DNA of 64,000 bases from Malacoraja senta (taxonomy: Eukaryota): NCBI GenBank assembly GCA_038087875.1, contig CM075979.1:39680001-39744000 (forward strand), read 5' to 3'. Shown piece after piece: positions 712-58,898 of this stretch. A model generated the notes under the pieces. That model did no database searches and had not been told where the DNA came from. It was given only the letters and a program-made list of their open reading frames with translations. A program made the translations under genes and the position numbers. Numbering within the stretch: the stretch's first letter is position 1; every line of letters starts with the position of its first letter.

Positions 712-924
712 GTCAGGCAACTGTGACGTCTACAGGTAAATCAGGCCTCTGTAACTTTATTCTGTGTACTGAAGATTGTAAAGTTATGAAGTACACAGGA
801 AGATGTGAAAGTACAACCAGACCAGCAGAAACTACAACAGCAGCTACAACAGTGACAGTAACACCAACGTCAAGAGGAACTACCACATGTACCTGTGAGA
901 ATGACGGGCGAATAATGTTACCTG
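712..924 (+). CDS. Repeat exon 1, type A
   Basis: tttgcctccag|GTCAG...CCTG|gtaagt; 213 nt, phase 1-1; GQATVTSTGKSGLCNFILCTEDCKVMKYTGRCESTTRPAETTTAATTVTVTPTSRGTTTCTCENDGRIMLP. Confidence 0.92.
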
Positions 925-39900: not shown

Positions 39901-42900
39901 GTAATGGATGGCAAATAATCACACGCTTTTCATTCGGAAAACGTATGTCCACCCATTTCCAAGGTTAATTGTACACGCCTGATCACGCACCTTCAGGAGA
40001 CATTGCCATCTCCTCGCAATAATGAATCATGCAACTGAGTATCCGTTGTGCAGTTGTCAAGTAATCGTCTGCTGATTCCTTTATTGTGCTTTTACATTCA
40101 CTCTACAATTCCCTTTTACACAGCCTGTCAGCAGTAACCGGCTTTGCCAAAATGTTATGCTTCACAACCAGACCATGGTGCTTGCACAGATGTGGTTCAG
40201 AACGTCCCGATCCTTGATGCATTCTGCGAAATAATATTCTCATATTTCAAACATACTTACTAAGTGAAATGCTTGAACCAGGGTCATCAGCAGAGATAAA
40301 GATTTTTTTTTTTTTAATTTAAAAAAAAAATATTTTTATTTTATTAGAATTAAGTACAATCGTATGGCACCAAAGTGCCTAATACATATTTTCATAATAC
40401 ATTTTATGTACAGCTTCTTATTTTTTTATTATAATAAAGAAGAATAAGAAAAAGAAATTAGATAATAAAGGATAGAAAAACGTGAGATATATAGTGTGTG
40501 AAAAAGTAGAAAAAAGAATGAAAGAAGAAAGTTAAAGAAAAGAAAAGTAAGGAGATCATTATTTATACTCTTGACCATCGCTCGCCCAGTCCCGAGAGAA
40601 TTAGCTTTTACAATTGTGTTGCACCATATGATTCCAAAAAGACGACAAATGGGGACCAACTCGTTATGAATTGGTCTGATTTATCTATTAGGAGGAATCG
40701 CATTTCCTCAAGATGTGCGGTATCCAACATGCTTGCAATCCACATTTTGAGCGAGAGATAAAGATATAACATGCAGGTTCACAAACCCTGATTTTCTTTA
40801 CTTTGCCTCCAAGTCAGGCAATGTTGATGTCTGCCGGTAAATCAGGGCTGTGTAACTTTACTCTGTTTACTAAGGTTCAAATGATTATGGGTCAAACACA
40901 GGTAAATGGGACATTCAATTAGGTAATTTGGTTAGTTTGGATGAGTTTCAATGCTGTATAACACTATGACTCTGGTGGATTGGATTTGAGAGGCAGTTCC
41001 TGCTCCTAGTGTGTGTATGTCTACATGGTGGCTGTTGGTGTTGTTCCAAATCTCAGAAGAATCTTGGAATATTGTGAAACTTAAAGAGTCTGTAAAGAGA
41101 ATTTGGAGAACTGATGTTAAGTTACACATGAGTCCTTAAGGAGCCATCACTATATCTGGGAAATGTCTGGAAATGATGAGTCAAGCAGTTCCCTGAAAGC
41201 ACCAATGTCCAAAAGCTACCAATGTCAAACACCATCAAGGAAATCTGATTCCCATTTTTTGTATCCATTCATCCCAGTTGAAAAAGATTGTGTTTGTTTG
41301 CATTATTGACAGACCTAGAAGAACCATTGCCAACCAGCTCCAAAAACGCAGACGATGCTGTTTGCTCAGATTTGGTTCAGAACATCCTGATCCTTGATGC
41401 AGTCGGCAAAATAATATTCGCATATTTCAAACTTATTTCCCAAATGAAAGACATGAACCAGCTTCAACATCATACATAAAGATAGTCACCAGTTACATCA
41501 CCTTCAGGTGGACACAATCTGATTTTTTTTTCTCTTTGCTTCCAGGTCAGGCAACTGTGACTTCTGCAGGTAAATCAGGCCTCTGTAACTTTACTCTGTG
41601 TACTGAGGATTGTGAAGTTCTGAAGTACACAGGAAGATGTGAAACTACGACCAGACCAGCAGAAACCACAACATCAACTACAATAGTGACAGTAACACCA
41701 ACGTCAAAAGGAACTACAATCTGTTCATGTGATGTTGACGGACATATAATGTCACCAGGTAAGTGTGTCAGTAATCAAAGTGCTCTTCTATTCACATTTC
41801 AAAGTAAGAGGTTTACCTCAGTCTTTAGCTTTGTGCAGATGATTGCAAGAAATGCATCAGATTATGAAGCTGATGCATTATACTATACGTCAACAAAAAT
41901 TATCGCAACTTATTGCTTTCAATGAATTTCCGTTTGAGTTAATGTGGTCAAAGTTTTTCATAGCTCCAATGCGACCTTGTTCCTTGCAACCATAGAGCTA
42001 CAGGATATATTTGGTTCAAATGCTCCTTAAATTCAACATCATATTACGATACAGTTCAACATCCCTACATTGAGATTAGCAGCAGAATTGATCAGTAGAG
42101 GTTTGTACAGAATTCCGAACCTCCACATCTGTACTAGAAATTCTGTGGTCCACCCGATCCCATGGCTGTGTTATGGGCCTGATCATGCCCCGCTGAAAAT
42201 GATATTTCTTCACAAAAATACACGATGCAACTAAGCAACCTTACTGCAATTCCCGTTAACTCTTCTGCTGGATTCTGTGTTGAGTTTTTCCATTCTATCG
42301 GCAATGCCATTTTGCAAGGCCTGCCAACCACAAGCTATGATATGAAAACACACACTGGTATTTTCTCAGGGGAGGGACAGAATTTATTGATTCTTGAGAC
42401 AAACTCATTGAAATTATATTAGAGCCTCCTCAACAATTCTGCACAACTGAAATATTCATATTCAACATCATACATAAAGATATTTATCAGTTACATCACC
42501 TTCAGGTGTACACAACCTGATTTTAATGTTTGGTCTCCAGGTCAGGCAACTGTGACGTCTACAGGTAAATCAGGCCTCTGTAACTTTATTCTGTGTACTG
42601 AAGATTGTAAAGTTATGAAGTACACAGGAAGATGTGAAAGTACAACCAGACCAGCAGAAACTACAACAGCAGCTACAACAGTGACAGTAACACCAACATC
42701 AAGAGGAACTACCACATGTACCTGTGAGAATGACGGGCGAATAATGTTACCTGGTAAGTGTGTCAATTATCACAGAGATCTTCTATTCACATTACAAAGA
42801 CAAAGATTTTGTGCAATGACTCTTGCTGTCTGCAGCTGTATTCTAAAAGTACCTCACATTTTGAAGTTGTTGCTCCAATCCATTTGTCAACCAGATGATA

Positions 42901-45900
42901 GATTGTGCTAAGTTATTTCTATTCTACATTTTTTTTCTGTATGATGAATTTTAATTTGAAGTTCTTAATTCCTCCAACTGTTACCAGAAGCTTCTTGCTT
43001 GCAACTGTTGAGCTCCAGGATAAAATTGTTTCAAGTGGTCCTCAGCAGCAACATCAGGTTGTGATGTAATCCATAATCCCAAAGCTGAAATTGGCAGCAG
43101 CATTGATTGGCAATGGATGGCAAATAAATACACACTTGATTTTCCTTGGGTAAAGTTATGTCCACCCATCCGCAAGGTCAATTGTACATGCCTGACCACG
43201 CACCTTCTGGAGACATTGCCATTTCTCGCGATAATGAATCATGCAACTGAGTATCCATTTTGCAATTGTCGCGCTATTGTCTTCTGATTCCAGTATTGTA
43301 CTTGTACATTCACTCCACCATTCCTTTACACAGCCTGTCAGCAGCAAGCAGCTTTGCCAAAATGTTATGCTTCACAACCAGACCCTGGTGTTTACCGGAT
43401 GATGTTCAGAACATCCCGATTCTTGACGCAGTCTGATAAATAATATTCACAAATTTAAAACTTATTTCTCAAATGATGGATATGAACAAGCTTCATTAGC
43501 GGAGATAAAGATATTTCATGGTTTTATTACATTCAGGTTCACACACCCTGATTTTCATTATTTTGCCTCCAGGTCAGGCAACGGTGATTTCTGCAGGTAA
43601 ATCAGGCCTCTGTAACTTTACTCTGTGTACTGAGGATTGTGAAGTTCTGAAATACACTGGAAGATGTGAAACTACAACCAGACCAGCAGAAACCACAACA
43701 TCAGCTACAACAGTGACAGTGACAGTCACACCAAAGTCAAAAGGAACTACCATCTGTTCCTGTGATGCTGACGGACATATAATGTCACCTGGTAAGTGTG
43801 TCAATTATCAAAGTGCTCTTCCAGTCACATTTCAAAGTAAGAAGTTTACCTCGGTCTTTAGCTTTGTGTAGATGACTGCAAGAAATGCATCAGATTACGA
43901 AGCGAACGCATTATCCTATACATGTTAATAGAAATTATAGCATCTTATTTCTTGAAATGATTTTTCTGTTTGGGTCAAAGTTTTTCGTTGCTCCAATGTG
44001 ACCTTGCAACCATTGAGCTACATGATATATTTGGTGCAAATGATCCTAAAATGCAACATCTTGTTACGATATAATTCAACACCCCTACATTGCGATTGGC
44101 AGCAACATTGATCATAGAGGTTTATTTACGATTGTGGACCTACACTTTTATACAGGAAATGTTGTCGTCCACCCGACCCTACGTTTTGTGTTATGGGCCA
44201 GATCATGCCTCCCATGAAAAAAGTTATTTCTGCCCAAAAATGAACTAAGCAACAGAGCAACCTTAATGCAATTGTTGCTCACTCTTCTGCTGCTTTCTGT
44301 ATTGAGCTTTTACATTTTCTCTGTAATTTCCTTTTACAAGGTCTGCCAGCCACAAGCTACGATATGAAATCACGCACTGATCTTTGCTCAGATGTGGTTG
44401 AGAATTTCTTGAGACTGGATGCAAACTCTTTGAAATTATAACAAAGCCTCCGCAACAATTCTGCACAACCGAAATACATAACTCAGCTTCAACATCAAAC
44501 AGAAATATAGTCATCAGTTCCATCACCTTCAAGTGGACACAACCTGATTTTCTTTTCTTTGCCACCAGGTCAGGCAACTGTGACTTCCGCAGGTAAATCA
44601 GGCCTCTGTAACTTTACTCTGTGTACTGAGGATTGTGAAGTTCTGAAGTACACAGGAAGATGTGAAACTACAACCAGACCAGCAGAAACCACAACAACAG
44701 CTACAACAGTGACAGTCACACCAACATCAAGAGGAACTACACAATGTACCTGTGAGAATGACGGGCGAAAAATGTTACCTGGTAAGTGTCAATTATCATA
44801 GACCTCTTCCATGCACATTGCAAATTAGCAGAGATAAAGATATTTCATGGTTTTATTATATTCAGGTGTACACAACCTGATTTTAATGTTTTTCCACCAG
44901 GTCAGGCAACTGTGACGTCTACAGGTAAATCAGGCCTCTGTAACTTTACTCTGTGTACTGAGGATTGTGAAATTCTGAAGTACACAGGAAGATGTGAAAC
45001 TACAACCAGACCAGCAGAAACCACAACATCAGCTACAACAGTCACAGTAACACCAACGTCGAAAGGAACTACAATCTGTTCCTGTGATGTTGACGGACAT
45101 ATAATGTCACCTGGTAAGTGTGTCAGTTATCAAAGTGCTATTCTAGTCACATTTCAAAGCAAGAGGTTTACCTCAGTCTCTTGCCAAGTGCAGATGATTG
45201 CAAGAAATGCATCAGATTGTGAAGCTGATGCATTGTCTTATACATGCCAACAAAAATTATACCATCTCTTCGCTATCATACTTTTTTGCGTTTGAATTAA
45301 AATGGACAAAGTTCTTCATTGCTCCAAAGTGCCTTCTTCCTTGCAACCATTGAGCAACAGGATATATTTGGCCGAAATGACCCTAACATGCAACATCTTG
45401 TTACAATATCTGTTGATTCTTGATACAAACTCTTTGAAATTATATGGAATCCTCCTCAACAATTCTATCCAACCGAAATACATAACTCAGCTTCAACATA
45501 ATACATAAAGATAGTCACCAGTTACATCACCTTCAGGTGGACACAACCTGATTTTCTTTTCTTTGCCACCAGGTCAGGCAACTGTGACGTCTACAGGTAA
45601 ATCAGGCCTCTGTAACTTTACTCTGTGTACTGAAGATTGTAAAGTTCTAAAATACACAGGAAGATGTGAAACTACAACCAGACCAGCAGAAACTACAACA
45701 TCAGCTACAACAGTGACAGTAACACCAAAGTCAAGAGGAACTACCACATGTACCTGTGAGAATGACGGGCGAATAATGCTACCTGGTAAGTTTGTCAATT
45801 AATTCATTCCTAAATTGTTTTAATTTTCTAATTAAACTTTTGTTTCAGACTCAAGGTCCAGATAAAAGACGACATTACATAGAATACATTGCATATAAAA

Positions 45901-48900
45901 ACACCATCAAATACATATAAAAGCTTAGTGAATTACTTATAAGAGCATCATAAATTATATACAAAAACACAACACATGATTTAAAATCCAGAATAAAAAG
46001 AAAGATCATGTCCTACAACGAGACAACGATACCAATGTCCACAGCTGTGATTGGTTGCATGTAGTGCTAAACCTTCATTTTCAGAGTCATTAATCCTGCA
46101 AATAAATTGATACATATGATTTCTTAGGATTCCTAGTAAAGTACAGACTCCTGCAGCCAAAAACATTTGACTTGCACTACACCATGTAGGTTTCTTTAGT
46201 AGTATTCTCATGACATCATTATTCGCTACTTTAAGTCTCTGTAAAATTGTTTTTCTGTAGTTTGACCACACGTGTGCAGTACAGAGTGGTGTACAATATG
46301 CTCTGAACAGAGACATCTTCACTACATCTGTACACGCACCAAACTTGTGAAAGGGAATATTCGCTTGTACATACAACATATGACGGTGCCTATAAATATC
46401 CTCATCATCTGCCACAGAGGGTAGTTGAGGCCAGTTCATTGGCTATATTTAAGAGGGAGTTAGATGTGGCCCTTGTGGCTAAAGGGATCAGGGGGTATGG
46501 AGAGAAGGCAGGTACGGGATACTGAGTTGGATGATCAGCCATGATCATATTGAATGGCGGTGCAGGCTCGAAGGGCCGAATGGCCTACTCCTGCACCTAT
46601 TTTCTATGTATCTATGTATTTCTATGTATCTAAGGAGTGAAGAGGAAGGGATACAGAACATGAAAGTCATGAGAGTCTGACGAAGGGTCTTGACCCAAAA
46701 CCTCACCCATTCCTTGTCTCCAGAGATGCTGCCTGACCCGCTGAGTTACTCCAGCATTTTGGTTCTATGTTCGGTTTAAAAGTTATAGACGTCTGATTTA
46801 ACTGCTGCCTGACCTGGAGACAGAGAAAATAAGGTTTACACCTGATACACTCATGACAGTGTAGCCAAATACCAACCTAACACATATTAAAATTCTCCAA
46901 ATTTAGGTAACTACATAAGTTCCTCCACCCCCCACCCCCCACCACATTGCCCACCCTCCCCTTTCTTCCCCCCCTCTCTCCCATGTGCCTCATCTAGACT
47001 TGCACTTATCTCCACCACTTCCACTTCCACTTCCATTTCTTCCTCTAGCCTCACGATTTGCAACTCATCAATCCTTTTCTCTTGCACGTTCTGACCTTTG
47101 CCTACACATCTGCATCTCCAAAACCCACCACAAGCAATCTGAATAAGAGTCCTGACCCAAAGTGTCACATTTCCATTTTCTCCAGAGATTCTGCCTGATC
47201 CGCTGAGTTACTCCAACACTTTGAGTCTTTTTTTGTAAACCAAAATCTGCAGTTCCTTGGCCCTTCATCTCATGTTCTGTGGAGATGCGGATCCAATGTT
47301 GCCAATGACCCACTGCTCTTTCTAGTTTGCGATGTACTCTTCCCATTGCATAGAGCTTGCCTGATGAAGAAAACACAGTTCAACAGCAGTCTACAAGCTT
47401 TGCAAAGGAATTGCCCAATACATATTTGTATATATCTTTGTATATTATATATATTTTGACAGCAAACAGCATCAAAATCCACAGGGTAGCTAACTAGTGT
47501 ATGGGCTGAAGAAACATTGTGGCATTAATAATATCAGTGGCAATGTAGTGGTGATGTAGCTTCTGCAGAATGAGTGGTGACTCCTAGTGTATTCTCTGCT
47601 TGAAATATGACTTTTGTTCATTTTTATATCCATCTAACACATTGATGAAGCATAATTCCTGTTGCTTTGACATGCAGGGCAATCCTCTGTGAGTTCTGAA
47701 GATAAATCGGGCCTCTGCAATTACACACTGTGCACTGAGGGCTGCAAAACGTTGACATATACAAGAAAATGCGAAAACACCTCTCCAATCACCGAGCACA
47801 GTACAGCTGAAACCACAACAGTGCAGACAACAACTCCCAGTTCCACAGCTTCAACAACCTGTTTCTGCAAAGTCAACGGCCAAGTAATATCTGCAGGTGA
47901 GTGTTTCACTTGTTCATAACATGTGACTGTATAAATCAATCATTAAATTGTACAATTGAAGTGATAGTCCAGTCCTTTACATGGCTTGATTCACAGTCCA
48001 TTGAATGCGTTTGTTAAAGACCTCTGTATAAGCTCAGCATGGGAATTTGTACAAATCACTATACGAACGTTGGTACAAACGTCTATGTCTTTCACAGGTC
48101 TTCCACACATGTTCCAGAGCAGTGGAAGCAGGCCTCTTATCAATGTGCCACTTCCTAATCTTCCCATGTGTGAGGATGTTCCCAGGCTTCCTTGTTCATG
48201 TGCTACTAGCCCAAGTTAGCCCAGACCCCTGATTTTGGCCTCATCTCCCCTTGACCAACTGGTATAGAGACGCAGACACCAAACTGACACCAGTACATAA
48301 CCTAGTGTTTCCAGCGAAGCAATCACAGTACTGATCATTTGCTGCTGTGCACTTACTTGGTTCACTCACACAAATACATGTGGCTTGTTAAAATATCCAA
48401 TTTTTCTTGTTCAGTTCAGTATATTATCACGTGTACCGAGGTAAAGTGAAAAGCTTTTGTTGTGTCCTAATCAGTTTGCGGAAAGACAATACATGATTAC
48501 ACTCGAACCATTCACAGTGTACAGATACATGATCAGGGAATAACGTTTAGTGCAAGGTAAAGCCAGTAAAGTCCAATCAAAGATAGTCAAAGGGTCACCA
48601 ATGAGGAGGATCGTCATTCAGGACTGTTCTCTGGCTGTGGTGGAATGTTTCAGTTGTCTGATAGCAGCTGGAAAGAAACTGTCCCTGAATCTGAAGGTGT
48701 GCATTTTCACTTCTATACCTTTTGCCCGATGGGAGAGGGAGAAGAGGGAGTGGGCAGGGTGTGACCCGTGCTTCTCTTTGTAAAGAATGTACTATCTGTA
48801 TGTCTGTCGGACTGTAAGAGCTTTCTCCTTTATTTCTCTGTTTTTACTTCGTCTTTCTATTTGTGGTATTTTTTGGTTCCTTTTGGTCTTTATTAATGTA

Positions 48901-51900
48901 GCCTGTAGTAGTTTCCTGCATTGTCCAAATTCAAAAAGGGGTCTTGAAATGCATACATATGGTTTGAAGACCATCTACCTCAGATTTATTCTAGAAATTC
49001 AGTTCTATGTGAAAAGATCACTGAGGATGTGATGAGAGCCTTATTTGCTCGATGAGCAACACCATTGTATCACAGGTTTGTGCAGCACAGAAATGGCCCC
49101 TTCGGCACAATATGTCCACAACAACGTGTTTGCCCCTGTACACATATCCCATTTGAAGCATTAGGACTGTATCCTTCTATGCCTTCCCTACTTAGGTCTA
49201 CCTCAATGCCTCTTAAACATAGAGATTATATCTGATTCTACTGTGGTGACAGATTTTTATATCGTTTCAAGGATTCTTTCCTTTAGTCACTATGATTGAA
49301 GACGGGATCAGAAGATAATCGAAACGCACTCACGAGCTCTCCACGAGACATTCAATGCCGTTGAAAGATAAATCTTCCAAACACAGTCTCTTGATTAATA
49401 GTTTCTTTATTGTAGTCGTAAAAACAGTAAGATATTAATCCAAACTTCTTCTTGTATAAGTACATTTCAATTCAATCGTGGTCATGTTCGTGCATGGTCA
49501 AAAGCTGTGACCTCTCCCCCATTCTTCAAATGAAAGTAACTACTAGAGAGTCTGCGCGAGAATCCCAGCCCCAAACACGCCTCAGACTACATATAAATCC
49601 CACCCACATTATTACAGGCAGATAGAATTTAAAGGTAACTGGTTATAGTTATAACACACTGAGTTAAGCTAAATGGCTACAACATCTAGCACCTCCTCTG
49701 GCTATCCCTAACCCTCACGTCCCTTCCAAAACTCCTTCATCTCATCTTAAACATGTGCCCTCTTATTTTTAATATCCCTGCCATGGGAAAAAGATTTGGA
49801 CAATATGCTCAATCTTTGCTTCTGTTCATCTTATATACCTCATTCAGATCACCAGGTCTCCTGGTGAATCACCTCTGCACTCTCTCCAGTGCAACCACAT
49901 CCTTTCTATAGTGTGGGCATCAAAACTGCACACATTACTCCTTATGGTATAACCAGTGTTTTGTAAAGTTGCACCGTAACATCCCGATTCTTATATTCCA
50001 TGTCTTGACCTACAGAAGTTACCAATACCATATGCTTTCTTCACCATCCTATTTACCTTTCCCTAGCTATCAATGTTCTATTCTACATTTTCCTTGAGCT
50101 TCATCCCCTTTGATATCTCATTTTCACACAATACCCTTCCATATCTCTGTGTCTCCCTCTCCCCTCAGTCTGAAGAAGGGTCTCCACTGGAAACGTCATC
50201 CATTCCTTCTAATCAAAGAAGCTGTTTGTCCCTCCATCATTTTGTGTCTATCTCTTGCTTCTAATATAGATATAGAATGATAGTCAGCATATCTTACCTG
50301 CTAATAATATTTTGTTTAAGAAGGAACTGCAGATGCTGGAAAATCAAAGGTAGACAAGAATGCTGGAGAAACTCAGTGGGTGAGGCAGCATCTATGGAGC
50401 GAAGGAAATAGGCGATGTTTCGGGTCGAGACCCTTCTTCAGACTAATAATATTTAATCACCTCCTTTTATTCTCAGTTTCTCCTATACCCTCTATATTCC
50501 TCAAGGAAAAATGCTTGACTGCAGTTGGTGTACCTGCCATTACTATTTTCCCTAATCAAGCCATCAATAACATATCAAAGGTTCATTAATCTTGCCATCA
50601 TTCCATTTCCCTATTACTGGAACCCTTGCTAACATTGTTTAAAAAAACATTCCCACTTGTCAAATGAATAATATATTATGGCTGCAGATACAAAGCAAAA
50701 TAACGTTTATTAAATCTGTTCAACCATTCTTCTGGTGCAATTCTAAAACAAATTCAATCCGAAGAATATACAAACCAATGAAATATTAGAGTACAGTATA
50801 AGCTGGCAAAATGGTTTCAAAATGCAGTAATATACATATCCAACCACAAATGTTTCAACTGTACCATTCTGTAATTATAAACATATAACCTTTCTATTAG
50901 TGTTTAAACTACAAATCAGAGACAATCTGTGCTCTGACTAGTTTCACTGTCCTCTTGATTAATGTTACTGATTGTGTGCCTCGCTGTCATCTTGCCCTCT
51001 GCTAACAATGAACCATTCTACATTTCCCTGACCATTGTCTGCTTTGATCTGTAGTTTTCACACCATACCCTTCCATATCTCTCTAGTCTTCCTCTCCCCA
51101 GACTCGCAGTCTGAAGAGCGTCTCGACCCGAAACATCACCCATTCCTTCTCTCCAGAGATGCTGCTTGTCCCACTGAGTTACTCCAGTATTGTGTGTCTA
51201 TCTATGCCAATAACACCAGCAGGTAGAATTTATTTTACTTCTAAATTACAATTTCCATTTGTTCGACCTTTGGGTCAGGCTGCAGCGAGCTCTGTAGGTC
51301 TTTATACACATGGGAAAATGCAAAGCCACTGCTATTGCTATACCCAATACAACAGAATCTACAAGGCGTGGAAACAGGCCCTTCGGCCCACCGAGTCCAC
51401 ACCGACCAGCGATCCCCATGCACTAACACTGTCTACACACAATAAGGACAATTTTCACTTATACCAAGTAGTCAATTAACCTACAAACCGGTACGTCTTT
51501 GGAGTGTGGGAGTAAGACGAAGATCTCGGAGAAAACCCACACAGTCGCGGAGAGAATGTACAAACTTCGTACAGAGAGCACCCATAGTTGGGATCGAACC
51601 AGGGTCTCTGGCGTGCAAGCGCTGTAAGGCAGCAACTCTACCAACTCTACTCTGCGCACAGTTACTATTGCAATGTTCACCTGGAAAATAGAGCAACTAT
51701 TTAAAAACCTTCCGTTCTGACCTCACAAATTTGGGTAACGTTTGTTTTTAACCCTCCTTTGCATGTTATATCTAACCATGATATAACCAAGCTGCAATCG
51801 TTTATCTCTTCCCACTGCAACCAGGGGAACAATTGTCCTAAAGAAGAGGTGATATTTCTAATTTTCTGTGTGTGTGATTCTTGGTAGAAATATGCCAAAT

Positions 51901-54900
51901 AAAATCTCATGATGCAATACATAAAATAGTGCATTTCCCATGAGGCAATGTATGCATTTCCATGGTTTGTCCAAAAATGTAGTACTAGCAAGTGTGTTTT
52001 TTACCTAAATACTGAATTAGTGCAGTGTGTCAAGACTTACGGAGATCGCATTTCCTTTTCTTTCCAGGAGAGAAAATTTACTTTACCAGTGATAAAGCTG
52101 GCTGGTGTTACATTGGGTTATGTACATCTAAGTGTGATATTGTGAAGCACACCATACCATGCGAAACCTCCACTTCCGTCTTACCAACCACAGAGACATC
52201 AGCACCAACAACAACAGTATCAGTGATCGGTTGCCCAGACGTACACCCACCAAGAGCTGTGAGTATCCTCGTGACATCAGGGGTCTTTAGAACATAGAAT
52301 AGTACAGCATTGGAACAAGCTCTTCAGCCCCAATGTTAGTGCCGAAACATGATGCCAAATAAAACTGTTCTCATCTACCTGTACATGATCCATATCCAAA
52401 GTCTAGTCCCTACACTTCCATGTGCCTATCCAAAAGCCGATTCGTTTTGTAGTTTTTAGTTTTAGTGATATAGCGTCAAAACAGGCCCTTCAGCCCACCA
52501 AGTCCGCACCCACCAGAAACCACCCCGTACACTAACACTATCCTACACACCGGAGACAAATTACAATCTTTACCAAAGCCTATTAACCTACAAACCTGTA
52601 CATCTTTGGAGTGTGGGTGAAAACTGGAGCACCAAGAGAAATCCCACATGGTCATGGGGAGAACGTACAAACTCCGTAGAGACAGCACCCATAGTCAGGT
52701 TTGAACAGGGGTCTCTGGCGCTGTAAGTCAACAATCTACCGCTGCACCACCGTGCCACCCTAACGCCCAGCTGATCCAACATTACTTTGCCTGTGAAACT
52801 AGAGCGGACTGTTCTAAGTTGCAGCTGCTGTGAGGAGATGCTTCCCCAACCAGCTGGGAACCCATGTCACTCAGTCCTCTAAAATCTCATGACTTCATGA
52901 ATCTTTACAGCACCTCTCCCACCCAGCCGCATAACAACTGGCAGCCAGCCCTACTGACAGTCCCTATACAAACCCCTTCACCATGGATCAGGAAAGTACA
53001 CCCCCACCCCTCGCAGCCTTATCCCTCCTCCCTCGTCCCAGGCTATGGTAGGCCATCCAATCCCAAACACCCCGGCCACCTGTGGACGACCCTCCCCTGA
53101 ATGAGGTGCACCTCACCTACAGTCCACCAGGACTCATTCCCAGACAAAGACAAACCAAAGTCTTTCCTCTTTGCATTCCGCACCAGCGCAGTCTACCTGC
53201 CACATGTTGTCGGGGGCCTCTCAGTGACATATAATGCTCAGGCTCTTGATTTTGCTGCAACAGACGCAGCATGCGATGAAACCCCATGTTTCAGTGTTTC
53301 CCCCGGACCCAGTGAATTCCCAGATTACTGAGATATAAAATATGTCCAGCTACATTCTGGCCCTCTGCTCATTGCTTCTCCCCTTTCCCTTCTTTACTGA
53401 ATACCTCCTACCTGACTGTCCCTGGCCTTCTAATCCCCATGTAACCCTTCCATGATATTCTTTCTATTTTTCTGTCATTCCCTTACAAACGTCTACAGCT
53501 TCCCTCTCTTCTCGAAATATCATTGTGGTCCACCTCCCCCAGAACCAAAGGAGCTCATCTCAAGAGCTCACCTCAAGTGCACCATAACTGGTACTGAAAC
53601 TGTTAAGGAAAGTTTTTTAGTACTCATGGGTGATGGGGATCATCTGATTTTATTAAAACAGAAAAATATCAGCACGTTTTGCCATCCTTTTCCTATCAAA
53701 TAATTTTTGTTCAAACTCGATTAAACATATTGGTTTTCTTGACGTATTAGACTTATCACACATGTCTTTTGAAGACTTTAATGAGCTAATTGGTTTTCAT
53801 CCCAGTGTCACATTTATAGGTCTAAATGATATAGATATTTTAAAGGAACACCCCCATAATATATTGAAGGTCTCTTAACCATCCCCATGAGATTCTTTGC
53901 CCTGCCACATCCCCGCACTATTTCTGACCTTACTGGAATTGAAGGCTCAGATCTCAATGGGTTCTTGGCACAATGAGATTCAGGTCAGGTGGGTGGTAGT
54001 TTTTTTCTCCTTCTCCAGCCTCAGGGATTCTGTGAATGCCTTAACTTCTTACAATTGTTCATCCCCCCCCCCCCTACCGAACCATAGATGAATGAGACTT
54101 GGAAACTGGACAATTGCACAAAGGCAACATGCAAAGGGAATAACACTGTTTCCGTGGAGTCAGTGAAATGTCCAAGTGTTAAACCAATCGTTTGTCAAAA
54201 TGGACTGCAACCCAGAAAGGTTTATGACCATTCCAACTGCTGCTATCAGCAAGAATGTGGCTGTGAGTATTGGGGAAATGCATGCATTATCAAAATTAAA
54301 TGTGATTTAATAGATGGGTGGAAGATGGAGGTAATATGCTGAAGGAACGCGTAGTTCATTATTTCACTGTGTTAATTGACGAGTCGATAATACATCATCC
54401 CAACAGGTCTCACCACCAGAATCAATTACTCCAGCTTTATTTTTCAACTTTTTTTGTCTAGGCAACTCATTGAATTCTGGCAGAACTTGGATTCAGGCAA
54501 AGGTGTCTAGCTTAGATGGGAATCTTGCTCAGCAGAGATGAGTTGGGCCAAAGGGCCTGCATCCATGCTGCATGATTCCATGAGTATTAGAGATCAGTAG
54601 TCAGGGTCTGGGGGTGAGGAGAAATGAGAGGCCATTCTTCCCTTCAGTCCTGAAAAGAAGAGAGAATGCAATAAGTGTGTCCAGGAGCTAATCTCAAGTG
54701 GTCCATAACTGCAACAGAAACTTTCATGGAAAGTTTTTTTTAGTGTTTGTGCGTGAGGGGTGTTATCAAATTTTATAAAAACAGAAAAATATTCACATGA
54801 GGACAACAGAATAAGAGTTGTGGAACATACACAATACCAACCACAGAGATCTATGGGAGTAGCGACATGATCCATGGTGAGGAAACAAGATTCTGGGGAA

Positions 54901-57900
54901 AAGATCTTGCTGAACAAACGGTGATTGATACCATCATGATGAAATACTTCAAAACAATTATTGGTAGGAAGGTATTGGTAATTTAACTACTTGAAAAATA
55001 TGCAAATTTCTGGTATATGCTGATTCCTAGTAAGATGAAAAATATATATATTAATTTAACTAGTTGCAAAATATACTTGGTATGGGGATTTCCTGGGGAA
55101 TCGGGAGGCAATTCCTTGCAAATGGACATAGATTTCACCAACTGCGAACTGATGTAGTGTTTGGAGAGCGTAGCATACCATTTCTCACAGTGAAGGAAAC
55201 TGCCTCAGCCTTGTCTTAGAAATGTTTTTTTAAATGGCCAAATAGAATAAGAAGAGCCACAGGTAAAGTTTGATTTTCATTCAAACCCTTTCCTCCCAAC
55301 ATGCTGGGTTTTTCACTCATGGAGTCATAGAGTCAAGGAAACCCAGAGAATGGAAACAATCCCTTCGGTCCACCTTCTAAGCAGATCCCATATGAACTGT
55401 TTGGCCCATATCTCTTTAAATATTTTCTATCTATGTATCTTTTAAAATGTCTTTTAAATGTTGCTATTGTATCTGCCTCAACTACTTTGCCTGGCAATCT
55501 TAGTACATTTGGAGCCATTGACCTGATGCCAGTATATCTAAGCATTTGATGCCAGTATACCATCCTTTCCAGCAGTGCATGGGAACTCGTGTCTCACTAA
55601 TATGATGGTGTTCGCACATCTTGCCAGCTCTTCAGTATTGTGTTGGAGCTGAAGACTGTATTCACCTCAACGCCACCACTAAAGTTCAAAACCTCTGCCA
55701 ACTTAAGCATCATACCTTCTGCCTTCACATCCACGCCTCTCGTGTCTCCCAAAGATAGACGGCTGGTCAAAAGCTTCAAATTGCAAAACCAACCCTCCAG
55801 CATCAACAACCACCTCCTATCATCAAACCAAATTTGGATCTAAGTTGCCCATTTACCCATCTCCCATGTGAGACCTTATTAGACATTTACTGAAGTCTAT
55901 GAAGACAACATCAACTGCACATCTCTCAACAACATAGTCTTTCAATAGTTCAATCAATTTAGTCTGTCAGGATCCTTCCTCAACACACTGCCTTTCCTTG
56001 ATTAATCACCATCTTAGATTAATATTGTCCCTTATTTTTGTTCCCATTTTATTTACAATATTGGCATCATTGCAGAATAAAGGGGAGAGGCGAGGAGCAA
56101 TTTCTTCCTTCAGACAATGATGAATCTGTAATACTCTGTCCCAGGTAATTGGGGAGGTGGAGTCATTGAAAATGTTGCTGGCTAATACTGACAAATGATT
56201 GAACTCTAGGGGAGTCGGGGTCAATAGGAACAAGCAGGAATTGAAGGGAATAATGGAGTCAGATCAACAGCCATTTTAACAGGCAGATGTTTTAACAACA
56301 GATCAACAGGCAGAACACACCCAAATCGTGATCTGGCTGACTGCTGCTCCCATTCCTCTGCTCCCATTCCTCTGCTCTCTCTTTCAAGTCCAAATATAAG
56401 CAAAACTTGAATTAGGAAGACAAATATTTAACGTGAAATCTTGCATCACATTTCTCTTCCGTCAAAAGGCAATTTCAGCACACAAAGAAATCGGACAATC
56501 CGTTTTCCCAAAAATATAGTCACAAAACTGAAAGGAATTGTGAAGTAGCACGCTTTTGTTTTTTGGTTGAAGAGTGAGTTTTGAAGAACTTCTTGCTCAT
56601 ATACGATGGGGCTTTGGAATCTCATGACTGAACAAGCTTCCCTGCTTAACCTGTGGTTTTGAAGACAATCTCCCAGTGACATACTGGGATCTCGGCTGTG
56701 ACATTTTGAGAAAGTGCTAAGTGGGTCTTCAACCTATCGTTCTCCAAGTTGGAGACATAATCTCAATCAACAGAACAAAGCCATCACTGCCAATTTCATG
56801 GGAAGTTAAAAGTGCCTTGGAGCATAGGACCTTGCCAATAGGTTGGGGCTGTCCAAAAATGCTGCAATTGGCCAATTCAGACAGCACACAATGGGATTCA
56901 TACATCAACAATCTGGTTTGGTTTAGGCCTGAGTTTAAAATTACCATAACCTTATTCCTTTATTGGCAGAAAACATTTTTCTTCCAAAAACAATGATTAG
57001 ACTTCTAGCTTATAAAAATAATATATACAGTATTTTCATTTTTATTAAGAACTAACAAAAGGTCATCAATTGAACTGTTAACCCTATCTTCCTCCCCATA
57101 GACACTGTCAAACCAGATCAATATCTCCAACATTTTCAGTTTTTATTTCTATTTTCCAGTATCTGTATGTTTGCTTTTTCAGCTTAAATAAATAGTTGGT
57201 TGGAAACAGAGTCTGCCTTTGATATTCCAGGTTCCTGCATTGGATGGGGAGGTTCCCATTACATTACTTTTGATGGAACAGATTACACATTCAAAGGAAA
57301 ATGTACTTACATTGTGGTGAGGCAAATAACAGAAAAGATCGAAAACTTCAAGGTTTACTTGGACAACGGCAACATTGGGCCAGAAATGTCACAGCCAATA
57401 GCCCTCAAAATATTCTACAAATCTTTAGTAATCACATTGATTCGGGTGACTGCCAACAACTCAATAAGAGCTACGGTAAGTGTTTCTACACTTTCTGCCA
57501 ATTGGCAAAGAAGAGAGCTTCGCCCACCAGTTTGGATTTAAATCCATGATGAAAGTCCATTGCAAATAAAGCCATTGGGTTAAGGCTGGCATGGCTGTGA
57601 AGTTGCCTCTATGTCACTGATCCTCTCAATCTAAGGATGTATTCCAGGATGTATTCCAATCTTCCAAGCCATCCCATTGTGGCCCTTGCATTATTTTTAA
57701 CTGCATTCTCTGCAGCTGTAACATTATATTCTGCACTCTATTGTCTTTTCTGCACTACCTGATACATTCATCTATGATAAGATTTGCCTGGATAGCACAC
57801 AAACGAAAGTTTATCAGTATCCCAGTGCACATGACAATAATAAACCAGTGTTGGGCATTGAGGACAAACTGTTCTCAATGCTCTCCTAGAAATAACAGAA

Positions 57901-58863
57901 AACTAGGAATATCCCATTGTGTATATATGTGCCAAAGATTTGTCTGCCTAACCATCTCAATCCTCCCACTGGCCCAGGGTGCCCTCAAGTGGTAAGACCA
58001 AGTCACTGTCGGTCCAGTTTTGGAACTTTTACCAGATCGGACAGCGTGAAAATAGTCAATATGTAAAGATGGTGTCATTTACCTGCTGCACAATGTTTAC
58101 TCCTATTATGTGCAAATGTCCCATCGAGAAGAGTTCACCAAAGCCTCAATCAAATAGAAGACATGTCCAGAAGAAAAAAACCTGGGGAAGGAAGCAAACA
58201 GGAAAATGGTTCCAGTCAGTCATAGAGTTCTTTAGCACAAAAACAGACCTATTAACCAACTTTATATTCCCCGTTGACTTAATGTCTACCAAGTATGCCA
58301 AAGCTATGTATACCAAGTTGCCGACTCAACTCGTCCCACAGACTGTGGTGCACCCTGATAGAAATATATAAAACTAGACCAAGTGGGATCCATTGCAATA
58401 TTCCACCACTGACTCGTTCCCCCAACGCAACCCGTTCCACAACGCAAAATTCCACCACTCACCAATAGCCCCCAACACGGCTCATTTCCCCTTATCCCAC
58501 AGCACTCCCTCCCCCTCCTCTTCACCCTCACTCTTTTTAAACTTTTAAAAATTGACTTATCATTAAAAAAAATCCAATTCCACTTGCAGCCCCTGCCCAT
58601 TACAATGTTACAAATGACTGGACTCCCAGTATCTTGTCATTTGTAACATTGTAACGGGCATGGGCAGCAAGTGGAATTGGATTTCTTACAGTGAAAAGTC
58701 AAGTGAAAAGTTACATTTTTAAAACTTAAAATGTGAATAACTTGTAAAATATACCATCAATCTGAACGGAACTTGATACAACACACCACAGGACGATGGT
58801 GAGTATGGTGGTCCAACAATTGTAGCACTATAGTGTACCATTTAGGCATAATTTCAGGACATC

Positions 58864-58898
<35 letters not shown>

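What the first reader, a model, noticed from the sequence alone, without database searches (positions are those of the whole stretch)
45573..52258. The repeated domain straddles the exon junction and is the amplified pre-D4 Cys module of MUC5/MUC2
Seen: each exon ends with CxCxxxGxxxxP(G) and the next begins with QATVTSxGKSGLCNFxLCTEDCxVxKYTGRC, so the compact six-Cys unit exists only after splicing. The last copy (exons 40/41) reads CFCKVNGQVISAG|EKIYFTSDKAGWCYIGLCTSKCDIVKHTIPC. Known (from recall): human MUC5B and MUC5AC have one such module (CFC...PG..IY...D.AG...YA.C.Q.C...C) between the PTS region and D4. Inference: one exon holding the C-half of a module, a linker and the N-half of the next module was duplicated in tandem, turning a single-copy, poorly characterised module into the bulk of the protein.
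Basis: partly seen in the sequence, partly recalled or inferred. Interest (0 to 1): 0.72.

Follow-up and report, generated by a model that had tools for sequence, protein, structure and literature searches.

The report
Amplified split-exon cysteine module in skate mucin
A skate-like gel-forming mucin gene has copied one small exon about 40 times, and because that exon carries the back half of a tiny disulfide-knotted domain, a sugar-coated linker and the front half of the next domain, whole domains exist only after splicing; the domain is the multiplied version of a single, unnamed module that sits just before the D4 region of MUC5AC/MUC2-type mucins in bony vertebrates, mammals included.

Summary
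The window holds 39 intact 213-nt exons (one of 219 nt). All have AG/GTAAGT splice sites, all are phase 1-1, and two types alternate strictly. A divergent exon (47678-47896) and a terminal half-exon (52068-52258) follow, then VWCN/D4N, VWD4, C8-4 and TIL-4. Across each junction lies a collinear 44-aa six-Cys unit.

- **Profile match.** A profile of bony-vertebrate pre-D4N modules scores the last copy 52.5 bits and the repeats 17-24 bits. No Cys-fixed shuffle out of 2000 reaches these scores. A mammal-only profile also matches.
- **Intron position.** The phase-1 intron in the Gly-13 codon is at the same place in cat, Xenopus and a teleost.
- **Fold.** AlphaFold2 gives a five-strand mini-domain (pLDDT 83.5). 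It resembles fibronectin type I, VWF/mucin E modules and the N-terminal part of VWC.

- a 5-Cys paralogue without the intron follows E3 in MUC5AC;
- no Pfam model covers either module;
- the exon array occurs only in sharks and rays among 1.84 billion representative proteins, in NCBI "mucin-2-like" models;
- these proteins lack CysD.

Function is inferred, and no RNA evidence could be obtained. This is a new variant of a known kind, of moderate interest.

The parts
712..45785 (+). Tandem array of 39 intact exons (38 of 213 nt, one of 219 nt at 43573-43791). Each encodes the C-half (4 Cys) of a 44-aa module, a linker of about 27 aa rich in Thr/Ser/Pro, and the N-half (2 Cys) of the next module. 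Types B and A alternate strictly. The array continues beyond the 5' end of the window.
   Evidence: blastn of the reference exon plus splice-site and frame check; peptide catalogue and the bB aA alternation; intron lengths 119-1740 nt.
45573..45785 (+). Exon 39, the last regular repeat exon (phase 1-1). Its tail CTCENDGRIMLP(G) is the N-half of the penultimate module.
   Evidence: Sequence read directly; 100% reference.
47678..47896 (+). Exon 40, a divergent repeat exon (219 nt, phase 1-1). It holds a repeat-type C-half (QSSVSSEDKSGLCNYTLCTEGCKTLTYTRKC), a linker, and an ancestral-type N-half CFCKVNGQVISA(G).
   Evidence: Sequence and splice sites cag|GG and CAG|gtgagt; 49% identity to the repeat exons; 85% identity to Leucoraja P0025 3086-3159.
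52068..52258 (+). Exon 41 (phase 1 to 0). It holds the C-half of the last, ancestral-type module (EKIYFTSDKAGWCYIGLCTSKCDIVKHTIPC), a short Thr/Ser linker, and the start of VWCN/D4N (GCPDVHPPRA).
   Evidence: Sequence, polypyrimidine tract and cag acceptor, and GTGAGT donor; joined to the exon 40 tail it scores 52.5 bits with the bony-vertebrate pre-D4N profile.
54088..54262 (+). VWCN (D4N) exon (MNETWKLDNC...QQECGC), the domain that immediately follows the module in all gel-forming mucins examined.
   Evidence: ORF; sequence and splice sites; 83% identity to P0025 3236-3307; aligned with shark, alligator, frog and teleost D4N.
57233..60694 (+). VWD4 exons (about 57233-57520, 59591-59776 and 60428-60694; boundaries approximate, taken from tblastn).
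   Evidence: tblastn of Leucoraja P0025 on the window, 85-90% identity.
61460..63321 (+). C8-4 exon (about 61460-61639) and TIL-4 exons (about 63026-63097 and 63208-63321).
   Evidence: Pfam C8, E 4.5e-16; tblastn.
13987..14049 (+). Example of the 13 truncated exon remnants: the first 54-63 nt of an A-type exon, then unrelated sequence with a stop. The others start at 1474, 4372, 7304, 9789, 18198, 20683, 26692, 29594, 32038, 34940, 37876 and 40813. They lie inside the long B-to-A introns.
   Evidence: blastn rows with query end 54-63; sequence; only the first 63 nt align to an intact exon plus its intron.

Best explanation
The finding covers the 3' end of a long tandem exon array in an elasmobranch gel-forming mucin gene of the MUC5/MUC2 family. 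NCBI calls the orthologues 'mucin-2-like'.

**Ancestral state.** The ancestral gene, like today's MUC5AC/MUC2-type genes of bony vertebrates, had one 44-aa six-Cys module between the PTS region and VWCN/D4N. A phase-1 intron in the codon of Gly-13 split its coding sequence.

**Amplification.** In the elasmobranch stem lineage an exon arose that was bounded on both sides by copies of that intron. It carried residues 14-44 of the module (strands 3-5, four Cys), a linker of about 27 residues rich in Thr/Ser/Pro, and residues 1-12 of the next module (the first hairpin, two Cys). This exon was amplified by unequal crossing-over. Because it is phase 1-1, any number of copies stays in frame. Each splice junction rebuilds a complete module.

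**Present state.** In this genome the repeat unit is now a pair of exons (types A and B). At least 39 copies precede the ancestral last copy.

**The protein.** The product is a string of small, disulfide-stabilised fibronectin-type-I/E-module-like beads. Short linkers separate the beads, and they are very probably O-glycosylated.

**Shown here:** exon anatomy, homology, intron conservation, taxonomic spread and the predicted fold.

**Inferred:**
- The first step was a recombination between two Thr-rich coding stretches.
- The beads act as non-glycosylated nodes for non-covalent cross-links or ligand binding. This is the role CysD domains play in other mucins; these elasmobranch proteins have no CysD.
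For: - **Exon anatomy and phases:**
- **Collinear 44-aa units and their similarity:**
- **Profile matches:**. The module is present in 128 of 132 non-elasmobranch mucins.
- **Position.** The last copy sits directly before VWCN/VWD4/C8/TIL.
- **Same intron position and phase** in cat (L001), Etheostoma (L002) and Xenopus (L003). A shark-type scaffold, L004, carries two 210-nt phase 1-1 exons of the same design.
- **Taxonomic spread.** The exon-profile search of 1.84 billion representative proteins found only 8 proteins at E <= 0.001. Seven are named and come from sharks and rays; the eighth is an unnamed ENA scaffold with shark-type exons (L004). Genera named: Heptranchias, Narcine, Pristis, Chiloscyllium, Rhinoraja, Scyliorhinus. 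Leucoraja, Carcharodon, Cetorhinus and Rhincodon were added.
- **Module tree.** The post-E3 versus pre-type split has support 99/96. Repeats plus elasmobranch last copies have 95/94. The repeats alone have 100/98.
- **AlphaFold2.** The single module has pLDDT 83.5 and five strands, and the splice point falls in the loop between the hairpin and strand 3. In the three-module model the same five-strand pattern recurs, with linker pLDDT under 30 and pTM 0.29.
- **Fold matches**: tPA finger and fibronectin FnI (Z 5-5.8), VWF E3 and E' (Z 4.7-4.8), NEL VWC, and chicken MUC5B 1273-1324 (TM 0.74).
- **No CysD** (PF13330) in the elasmobranch orthologues (and the Pfam columns).
- **Conservation** across elasmobranchs is concentrated in the module. 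The linker keeps only its Thr-rich composition.
Against: - **No transcript evidence.** The runs found were genomic DNA. Splicing therefore rests on canonical sites, frame, homology and NCBI gene models of relatives.
- **Weak rejection of the alternative tree.** The AU test does not reject a tree that groups the repeats with post-E3 modules (p 0.33, only 44 columns).
- **Modest fold scores.** Z values are 5-6 or lower, with no Foldseek E <= 0.001, as expected for 50 residues but not decisive.
- **No sequence-family support.** No Pfam model (VWC, Fn1, TILa) recognises the module.
- **Unknowns.** Disulfide pairing, glycosylation, tissue of expression and function were not tested.
- **Chimaeras.** No holocephalan hit was found, but missing gene models cannot be excluded.
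Confidence: 0.85

Rival explanations
1. The repeated module descends from the post-E3 paralogue (or from E3 itself) at the N-terminal side of the PTS, not from the pre-D4N module. Its resemblance to the last copy would then be a family resemblance only.
For: The last copy also matches the human MUC5AC post-E3 segment in PDB chains 8qsp and 9gvj (E 8e-4). The post-E3 profile gives the repeats 11-13 bits. The AU test cannot reject repeats plus post-E3 as one group (p 0.33).
Against: - The pre-D4N profile scores the repeats higher than the post-E3 profile does: 24.2/18.6/16.6 against 13.4/11.1/13.1 bits. With the post-E3 profile, 7-10 of 2000 shuffles reach the observed value; with the pre-D4N profile none do.
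- The repeats keep Cys-35. In the 44 proteins that carry both modules, 42 of 44 pre-type modules have it, while 43 of 44 post-type modules have Gly there.
- The repeats share the phase-1 intron in Gly-13 with the pre-D4N module, whereas the post-E3 module is encoded without that intron in cat and Xenopus.
- The best tree puts the repeats with the elasmobranch last copies (95/94).
- The array abuts the last copy.
Confidence: 0.07
2. The folding unit is the exon-encoded piece (four-Cys part, linker, two-Cys part), with disulfides closing across the Thr-rich linker. On this view the junction-spanning unit is a paper construct.
For: Exons often equal domains. Both arrangements contain six Cys. No disulfide map exists.
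Against: - In bony vertebrates the homologous module is single and contiguous, so its N-half can only pair with the adjacent C-half. The post-E3 paralogue is even encoded on one exon.
- The first N-half of the array ends the PTS exon and the last C-half begins the D4N exon. Exon-wise folding would therefore leave two orphan halves.
- AlphaFold2 folds the contiguous 44 aa with pLDDT 83.5, with only four residues between strands 2 and 3. It predicts the linkers as disordered (pLDDT under 30).
- FnI and E-module structures align to the contiguous range 1-52 of the model.
Confidence: 0.03
3. The array is a decaying or misassembled repeat (pseudo-exons or collapsed duplicates) that contributes little or nothing to a real protein.
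For: Thirteen truncated exon remnants lie within the array. Copies are 88-97% identical, which is hard to assemble. No RNA evidence was obtained. NCBI models of relatives contain obvious local mis-splicing.
Against: - All 39 full-length copies are open, keep all six Cys and the conserved Gly/Lys/Tyr positions, and have AG and GTAAGT.
- A-type and B-type consensus exons differ at 25 nt; 8 of the 21 codons that differ are synonymous, and the core is unchanged.
- The same architecture appears in independent assemblies of at least ten shark and ray genera, with 9 to 51 repeat modules in the fuller gene models (fragmentary models hold fewer).
- Independent DNA runs cover the unique parts of the region at normal depth with almost no differences (table 8).
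Confidence: 0.03

Closest known systems
Single six-Cys module between the last PTS stretch and VWCN/D4N in MUC5AC/MUC2-type mucins of bony vertebrates (unnamed; no Pfam entry; mammalian examples here are nearly all MUC5AC)
   Same: It is 44 aa long with the same Cys spacing and the same Gly-7, Gly-13 and Gly-24 positions, and it gives 52.5 bits against the last copy. It has the same phase-1 intron in the Gly-13 codon and the same position directly upstream of VWCN. The window's last copy is its orthologue.
   Different: It is single-copy in bony vertebrates. Here there are at least 40 copies, and the repeat copies have diverged (QATVTS.GKSGLCNF instead of E.IYN.TD.AG.C.YA). In mammals, frog and teleost the N-half ends the exon that carries the PTS; here it ends a 213-nt repeat exon.
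Post-E3 module of MUC5AC-type mucins (present in the sequences of PDB entries 8qsp, 8qtb and 9gvj; chicken MUC5B 1273-1324)
   Same: It has the same length and overall pattern (C.C..(D/N)G......(D/E).IY.TTDG.GGC...C) and the same predicted fold (TM 0.74 to the AlphaFold model of chicken MUC5B). It also borders the PTS region.
   Different: It has five Cys (Gly replaces Cys-35), carries a conserved NGT sequon, lacks the Gly-13 intron, and lies at the N-terminal side of the PTS. It forms a separate clade (99/96). The MUC5AC D3 paper I read (PMC11933400) does not name it as a domain.
E modules of VWF/mucin D assemblies, fibronectin type I (finger) modules, and the N-terminal subdomain of VWC
   Same: The predicted two-strand plus three-strand beta mini-fold is shared. 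The structural matches have Z 4.7-5.8 and cover the whole module (tPA finger, FnI 8-9, VWF 1191-1241, VWF E').
   Different: Cys number and spacing differ. The Pfam VWC, Fn1_2 and TILa models do not detect the module. E modules always follow a TIL, whereas this module stands alone between glycosylated linkers.
CysD domains (Pfam Mucin2_WxxW) interspersed in the PTS regions of MUC2, MUC5AC and MUC5B
   Same: These are non-glycosylated, disulfide-rich globules that interrupt the O-glycosylated rod many times. They have a known role in non-covalent homotypic contacts (stated in PMC11933400), which is the role proposed here by analogy.
   Different: The fold is unrelated and the domain is larger (about 110 aa and 10 Cys, from my own knowledge). 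CysD is absent from the elasmobranch proteins. From my own knowledge, not tested here: mammalian CysD domains lie within the large central exon.
Tandem partial D3 repeats of mouse zonadhesin and the repeated VWD units of FCGBP (from my own knowledge, not tested here)
   Same: These are lineage-specific tandem amplifications of Cys-rich pieces inside a VWD-family protein, with repeat boundaries that need not match domain boundaries.
   Different: The pieces are much larger and of a different domain type. No alternation with mucin-type linkers is involved.

Membership tests
Pre-VWCN (pre-D4N) six-Cys module of MUC5/MUC2-type gel-forming mucins | Contiguous unit of about 44 aa with the pattern C-x-C-x22-C-x4-C-x3-C-x8-C, plus Gly at positions 7 and 13 | tested here: met
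   All junction-spanning units and the last copy align without gaps to alligator, caecilian, teleost, frog and mammal modules.
Pre-VWCN (pre-D4N) six-Cys module of MUC5/MUC2-type gel-forming mucins | Significant match to a profile built only from bony-vertebrate (or only mammalian) modules | tested here: met
   Bony-vertebrate profile: 52.5 bits (last copy) and 24.2/18.6/16.6 bits (repeats). None of 2000 Cys-fixed shuffles of the last copy and the two main repeat types (the penultimate copy was not shuffled) reaches the observed score. Mammal-only profile: 36.8 and 18.2/17.1/11.1 bits, with at most 1 of 2000.
Pre-VWCN (pre-D4N) six-Cys module of MUC5/MUC2-type gel-forming mucins | Phase-1 intron inside the codon of Gly-13 | tested here: met
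   Window: CCT G|gtaagt ... cag|GT CAG at every repeat, and GCA G|gtgagt ... cag|GA GAG at the last copy. The same holds in cat, Etheostoma and Xenopus.
Pre-VWCN (pre-D4N) six-Cys module of MUC5/MUC2-type gel-forming mucins | Position directly upstream of VWCN/D4N and VWD4 | tested here: met
   Met for the last copy: exons 40/41 are followed by the VWCN exon at 54088 and then VWD4, C8 and TIL. The repeat copies lie upstream of it, so for them membership rests on sequence, intron and tree.
Fibronectin type I / E-module / VWC N-terminal subdomain fold | Two-stranded hairpin followed by a three-stranded antiparallel sheet, stabilised by disulfides | tested here: met
   This is a predicted structure only. 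It has five strands and pLDDT 83.5. The best structural matches are FnI, tPA finger, VWF E3/E' and NEL VWC. Z values of 5.8 or lower are modest.
Fibronectin type I / E-module / VWC N-terminal subdomain fold | Recognition by the curated sequence models (Pfam VWC, Fn1_2, TILa) | tested here: not met
   No family reaches its threshold on repeat, last-copy, pre-D4N or post-E3 slices. Only the neighbouring E3 hits VWC.
Fibronectin type I / E-module / VWC N-terminal subdomain fold | Characteristic disulfide connectivity | not testable with these tools
   Model coordinates are not returned, and there are no experimental data.
Gel-forming mucin of the MUC2/MUC5 type | C-terminal VWCN-VWD4-C8-TIL block after the central region; N-terminal D1-D2-D'-D3; PTS region | tested here: met
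   The C-terminal block is in the window. The N-terminal D assemblies and a classical PTS are seen in the orthologues P0025, P0011, P0009 and P0003. They lie outside this window.
Gel-forming mucin of the MUC2/MUC5 type | CysD (Mucin2_WxxW) domains interspersed in the PTS | tested here: not met
   PF13330 is absent from P0011 and from P0009 residues 1-1700, and from the precomputed Pfam lists of all elasmobranch hits. Some frog mucins also lack CysD (PMC4948705), so this is not an absolute criterion.

The most novel reading that the evidence does not exclude
In elasmobranchs the amplified pre-D4N module has taken over the job that CysD domains do in other vertebrates. It would form dozens of small non-glycosylated beads that make reversible bead-to-bead or bead-to-ligand contacts and so set the gel properties of shark and ray mucus. 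On this reading the two flanking single-copy modules of mammalian MUC5AC (post-E3 and pre-VWCN) are overlooked interaction sites of the same kind.
Probability: 0.3. Interest if true: 0.7.

Novelty: new variant of a known kind. Interest (0 to 1): 0.55.

Why it matters
- **An unnamed domain family.** Gel-forming mucins are described as D assemblies, PTS, CysD, VWC and CK. This locus shows a further small domain family: a post-E3 module and a pre-VWCN module that bracket the PTS. It is conserved from sharks to primates but has no Pfam model, and I did not find it named in the structural papers I read.
- **A natural experiment.** One lineage has made this module the bulk of a mucin: 52 module matches (51 of them repeats) in a 6083-aa Narcine protein and at least 40 here. 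That supplies a deep natural alignment for structure and covariation work. It also suggests a small recombinant unit for testing what the mammalian single copies do.
- **A mechanism of domain amplification.** The repeating exon is out of register with the domain. Only tandem iteration and splicing regenerate whole domains.
- **Practical value for annotation.** The homology also corrects evident mis-splicing in current NCBI models.

Tried and rejected
1. **RNA evidence for the junctions.** Two searches for sequencing runs found only genomic-type runs. Laying them on 46300-52299 showed normal single-copy depth over the exons, huge depth over interspersed repeats, and no splice joints.
2. **Pfam on the raw exons and on spliced slices from orthologues.** There were no meaningful hits for the module; Crisp, DUF7025 and similar matches fall below threshold. 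I suspected that DUF7210 (PF23843) was the module. Direct scans of post-E3 and pre-D4N slices did not hit it.
3. **PDB sequence search with a repeat module.** It gave only parkin IBR noise. There is no solved structure of the pre-VWCN module; the MUC2 C-terminal structure starts at VWCN.
4. **Tandem Repeats Finder** found nothing, because its period limit of 500 is shorter than the unit of 1.7-2.9 kb.
5. **Human sequences.** The length limits of the homology search kept human MUC5AC and MUC5B out, so the closest primate tested is orangutan.
6. **Genomic DNA of shark and ray orthologues** (Pristis, Scyliorhinus, Rhincodon, Chiloscyllium) could not be fetched, because the gene was too long or the file too large. 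A small ENA scaffold with shark-type exons served instead.
7. **Origin of the truncated exon remnants.** I thought they were simple deletions joining exon to downstream intron. Only the first 63 nt align, so this was not supported.
8. **Other features.** Rfam and ORF scans of 45000-53500 on both strands found no other feature.
9. **Earlier notes of this scan** held nothing for this place.

Full report
**What is in the sequence**

The window is AT-rich eukaryotic DNA (GC about 0.40). It carries the 3' part of a gene on the + strand.

A blastn search with the exon at 45573-45785, followed by a check of frame and splice sites, finds 52 copies.
- 39 are full-length. Of these, 38 are 213 nt and one is 219 nt. 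Every one has an AG acceptor and a GTAAGT donor.
- Every full-length copy is open in the frame that starts with the last two bases of a Gly codon and ends with the first base of the next Gly codon. That makes each exon phase 1-1.
- 13 copies keep only the first 54-63 nt and then run into unrelated sequence with stop codons.

Each of the 39 exons encodes three parts in order:
1. (G)QATVTS.GKSGLCNF.LCTEDC.V.KYTG.C.
2. A linker of about 27 residues, with 15 Thr/Ser and 2 Pro.
3. C.C..DG.IM.P(G).

Two exon types alternate without exception over 36 exons, then aB aA aB.
- Type B has the head STGKSGLCNFILC and the tail CTCENDGRIMLP.
- Type A has the head SAGKSGLCNFTLC and the tail CSCDVDGHIMSP.

The present repeat unit is therefore an exon pair. 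Introns from A to B are 744-782 nt. Introns from B to A are about 560, 1270 or 1730 nt, and the longer ones hold an exon remnant.

Exon 40 (47678-47896, 219 nt, phase 1-1) is a diverged copy that ends CFCKVNGQVISA(G). Exon 41 (52068-52258, phase 1 to 0) begins (G)EKIYFTSDKAGWCYIGLCTSKCDIVKHTIPC and runs into GCPDVHPPRA.

Downstream lie the following exons:
- VWCN/D4N at 54088-54262.
- Three VWD4 exons.
- C8-4 (Pfam C8, E 4.5e-16).
- TIL-4.

The array starts before position 1, so 39 is a minimum.

**The junction-spanning unit**

Joining any tail to the next head gives 44 residues with Cys at positions 1, 3, 26, 31, 35 and 44. The two repeat forms, the penultimate copy and the last copy all align without a gap.

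The last copy scores z 6.3-7.8 against the repeat forms, measured against shuffles that keep the Cys in place.

**Is it the pre-D4 module of MUC5/MUC2?**

*Finding the relatives.* An HMM of ten exon translations (A1) was run against 1.84 billion representative proteins.
- It found only eight proteins at E <= 0.001.
- Seven are named and all come from sharks and rays: Heptranchias, Narcine, Pristis, Chiloscyllium, Rhinoraja and Scyliorhinus. NCBI names most of them 'mucin-2-like'. The eighth is an unnamed ENA scaffold with shark-type exons.
- Further searches added Leucoraja, Carcharodon, Cetorhinus and Rhincodon.

The longer gene models show a common order:
1. D1-D2-D'-D3.
2. A classical PTS that ends with an N-half.
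3. Between 9 and 51 repeat modules.
4. A last, different module.
5. VWCN-VWD4 and the rest of the C-terminus.

*The module in bony vertebrates.* With these proteins as queries I obtained mucins of bony vertebrates. In front of their VWCN they carry one 44-aa six-Cys module. Examples:
- alligator MUC5AC: CHCQVQESLYQPGEVIYNTTDSDGCVFYAICTSNCSVSRFQERC;
- a caecilian mucin-2;
- two frogs;
- Etheostoma.

A search seeded with the alligator region gave 120 listed amniote and amphibian proteins. In all, 128 of 132 non-elasmobranch mucins have this module. Among the mammalian proteins retrieved, nearly all are MUC5AC (two squirrel entries carry the UniRef name Mucin-2), so mammalian MUC5B was not tested.

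*Profile scores.* The table gives bit scores for the window's modules. Shuffles keep the Cys positions fixed, 2000 each.

| Profile | Last copy | Repeat modules | Shuffles reaching the score |
|---|---|---|---|
| 14 non-redundant bony-vertebrate pre-D4N modules, no elasmobranch | 52.5 | 24.2, 18.6, 16.6 | 0 of 2000 |
| Mammals only | 36.8 | 18.2, 17.1, 11.1 | at most 1 of 2000 |

*Intron position.* I mapped the module onto genomic loci of three species.

| Species | End of N-half exon | Start of C-half exon | Intron length |
|---|---|---|---|
| Cat | GCA G\|gtgtgt | cag\|GA TCC | about 250 nt |
| Etheostoma | CCT G\|gtaggt | cag\|GG GAT | about 1.6 kb (from the mapped exon coordinates) |
| Xenopus laevis | CC. 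G\|gtaagt | cag\|GC CAA | about 320 nt |

This is the same Gly-13 codon and the same phase 1 as at all 40 junctions in the window. A small ENA scaffold with shark-type sequence carries two tandem 210-nt phase 1-1 exons of the same design.

The last copy, searched against PDB sequences, hit human MUC5AC constructs (8qsp, 8qtb, 9gvj) at EACVCTYNGQRFHPGDVIYHTTDGTGGCISARCGANGTIERRVYPC, with E 8e-4. With profile A2 the score is 75 bits.

- **Position.** This segment lies just after E3. In the elasmobranch and cat proteins a separate E3 (CPC..NG..Y.PG...C..C.C......C) precedes it and is recognised by Pfam VWC.
- **Frequency.** It occurs in 126 of 132 bony-vertebrate mucins.
- **Cys-35.** In the 44 proteins that carry both modules, the post-E3 module has Gly at position 35 in 43 of 44 cases. 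The pre-D4N module has Cys there in 42 of 44.
- **Exon structure.** In cat and Xenopus the post-E3 module is encoded without the Gly-13 intron.

In MUC5AC-type mucins, then, two related small modules bracket the PTS. No Pfam family covers either of them. The MUC2 C-terminal structure starts at VWCN (PMC10082768). The text searches I ran in the MUC5AC D3 paper found no description of the post-E3 piece (PMC11933400).

**Which module gave rise to the repeats?**

- The pre-D4N profile beats the post-E3 profile on the repeats: 24.2/18.6/16.6 against 13.4/11.1/13.1 bits. With the post-E3 profile, 7-10 of 2000 shuffles reach the observed value.
- The repeats keep Cys-35 and the intron.
- A maximum-likelihood tree of 48 modules separates post-E3 from pre-type modules (99/96). 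It unites the repeats with the elasmobranch last copies (95/94). It makes all repeats one clade (100/98), with a ray subclade (98/91).

One caveat applies. With 44 columns, the AU test does not reject grouping the repeats with post-E3 (p 0.33).

Taken together, the evidence favours amplification of the pre-D4N module. The event would have come after the split from bony vertebrates and before the shark-ray split. Lineage-specific expansion and homogenisation followed.

**Fold**

*Single module.* AlphaFold2 on one module with a 44-sequence alignment (A2) gives mean pLDDT 83.5. It predicts five strands: a hairpin from the N-half and three strands from the C-half. The splice point lies in the four-residue loop between them.

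*Structural matches*. Z values are from the VIA-align second look; the last two rows are Foldseek results:

| Match | Score |
|---|---|
| tPA finger domain | Z 5.8 |
| Fibronectin FnI modules | Z about 5 |
| VWF E3 (1191-1241) | Z 4.8 |
| VWF E' | Z 4.7, 26% identity |
| NEL VWC (chicken) | Z 4.7; Foldseek probability 0.99 |
| AlphaFold model of chicken MUC5B, residues 1273-1324 (its post-E3 module) | TM 0.74, E 7e-3 |

The scores are modest in absolute terms, as expected for 50 residues, but they are consistent with each other.

*Three modules.* A three-module model (A3) repeats the five-strand pattern. The linkers have pLDDT under 30 and pTM is 0.29, so the picture is beads on a flexible string.

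*Folding unit.* The folding unit is the contiguous 44 aa, not the exon. The single-copy homologues have no second half to pair with. The array also begins with an N-half and ends with a C-half.

**How it probably arose and works (inference)**

*Origin.* A phase 1-1 exon of the form 'C-half, linker, N-half' can be produced in one step. Unequal recombination between the Thr-rich linker after the module and the Thr-rich PTS before it would do this, and it would leave a copy of the same intron on both sides. Those duplicated introns then drive further unequal crossing-over.

*Signs of ongoing turnover:*
- the A/B pair;
- the three intron length classes;
- the propagated exon remnants;
- copies 88-97% identical to the reference exon.

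*Constraint.* A-type and B-type consensus exons differ at 25 of 213 nt. Of the 21 codons that differ, 8 are synonymous, and all Cys and core residues are unchanged.

*Conservation across species.* Across elasmobranchs the invariant positions lie in the module, and the linker keeps only its composition.

*Proposed function.* The elasmobranch proteins have no CysD. I therefore propose that the beads serve as the non-glycosylated nodes of the polymer, for reversible cross-links or ligand capture, between short O-glycosylated spacers. This is analogy, not evidence.

*Context from the literature.* Mass spectrometry has detected gel-forming mucins named mucin-2-like and mucin-5B in shark skin mucus (PMC10707392). 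I could not link those accessions to this gene. A survey of mucin evolution (PMC4948705) does not mention such a module.

**Limits**

- There is no transcript evidence.
- There is no disulfide map.
- No human sequence was examined directly.
- No holocephalan was examined at the DNA level.
- The species of the window is not known to me. It is 83-97% identical in the C-terminal exons to Leucoraja erinacea P0025.

**Verdict**

This is a new variant of a known kind: a gel-forming mucin whose central region is built from an amplified, previously unnamed Fn1/E-like module encoded out of register with its exons.

Noticed in passing
window 1474, 4372, 7304, 9789, 13987, 18198, 20683, 26692, 29594, 32038, 34940, 37876, 40813 (each about 63 nt): There are thirteen truncated exon remnants. 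Each keeps the first 54-63 nt of an A-type exon (eight still have the AG acceptor), followed by unrelated sequence with a stop. They have been propagated along with the repeat unit. Directly after the remnant lies a 27-nt stretch (GT TCA AAT GAT TAT GGG CCA AAC ACA G) flanked by AG and GTAAAT. If spliced in, it would add SNDYGPNTG in frame.
   Followed up: partly
P0025 (Leucoraja erinacea XP model) residues about 3005-3016 and 3160-3174; window 52026-52067: The NCBI model of the Leucoraja orthologue includes the 27-nt insert once (GSNDYGPNTG). At the last module it uses an acceptor 42 nt upstream, inserting VCRDLWRLYFLFFP between the two halves. The window has the same open stretch (VCQDLRRSHFLFFP). 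Homology with all other vertebrates favours the acceptor at 52068, so these are probably annotation errors, though alternative splicing is not excluded. P0025 also skips the post-E3 module, and P0003 skips the last module and VWCN.
   Followed up: partly
PDB 8qsp/8qtb/9gvj (human MUC5AC), chain positions 395-444 / 496-545 / 1246-1295; P0097 1274-1317; P0011 1251-1294: A conserved 44-aa five-Cys module lies directly after E3 in MUC5AC-type mucins from sharks to primates, and is a paralogue of the pre-VWCN module. No Pfam model covers it. It is encoded on one exon in cat.
   Followed up: yes
window 46300-46900, 48300-48900, 50300-50500, 51100-51700: These intron segments have word depths of 10^4-10^7 in whole-genome runs, and short inverted or duplicated joints. 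They are interspersed repeats (SINE/LINE-like elements, for example the motif GGCCCTTCGGCCCACCGAGTCC) that fill the two long introns around exon 40.
   Followed up: no
L004 (ENA metagenome-labelled scaffold, 2319 nt) 1012-1221 and 1761-1970: A scaffold filed under a metagenome assembly carries two tandem shark-type repeat exons (210 nt, phase 1-1, 749 nt apart). This is host DNA in a metagenome sample.
   Followed up: partly
window, heads of type A versus type B exons (for example 2198 versus 3155): Type A modules keep an N-F-T sequon next to Cys-26, and this sequon is nearly invariant in repeat modules of other elasmobranchs. Type B has N-F-I and has lost it, so alternate beads may differ in N-glycosylation.
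   Followed up: no
P0013 (Rhincodon typus) 1195-1345: The whale-shark model contains a second VWCN-like plus VWD start (NETWLL...CDCYCNGWGGSHF) right after a truncated E3. This suggests either an extra D assembly or a fusion of two neighbouring mucin genes in the model.
   Followed up: no
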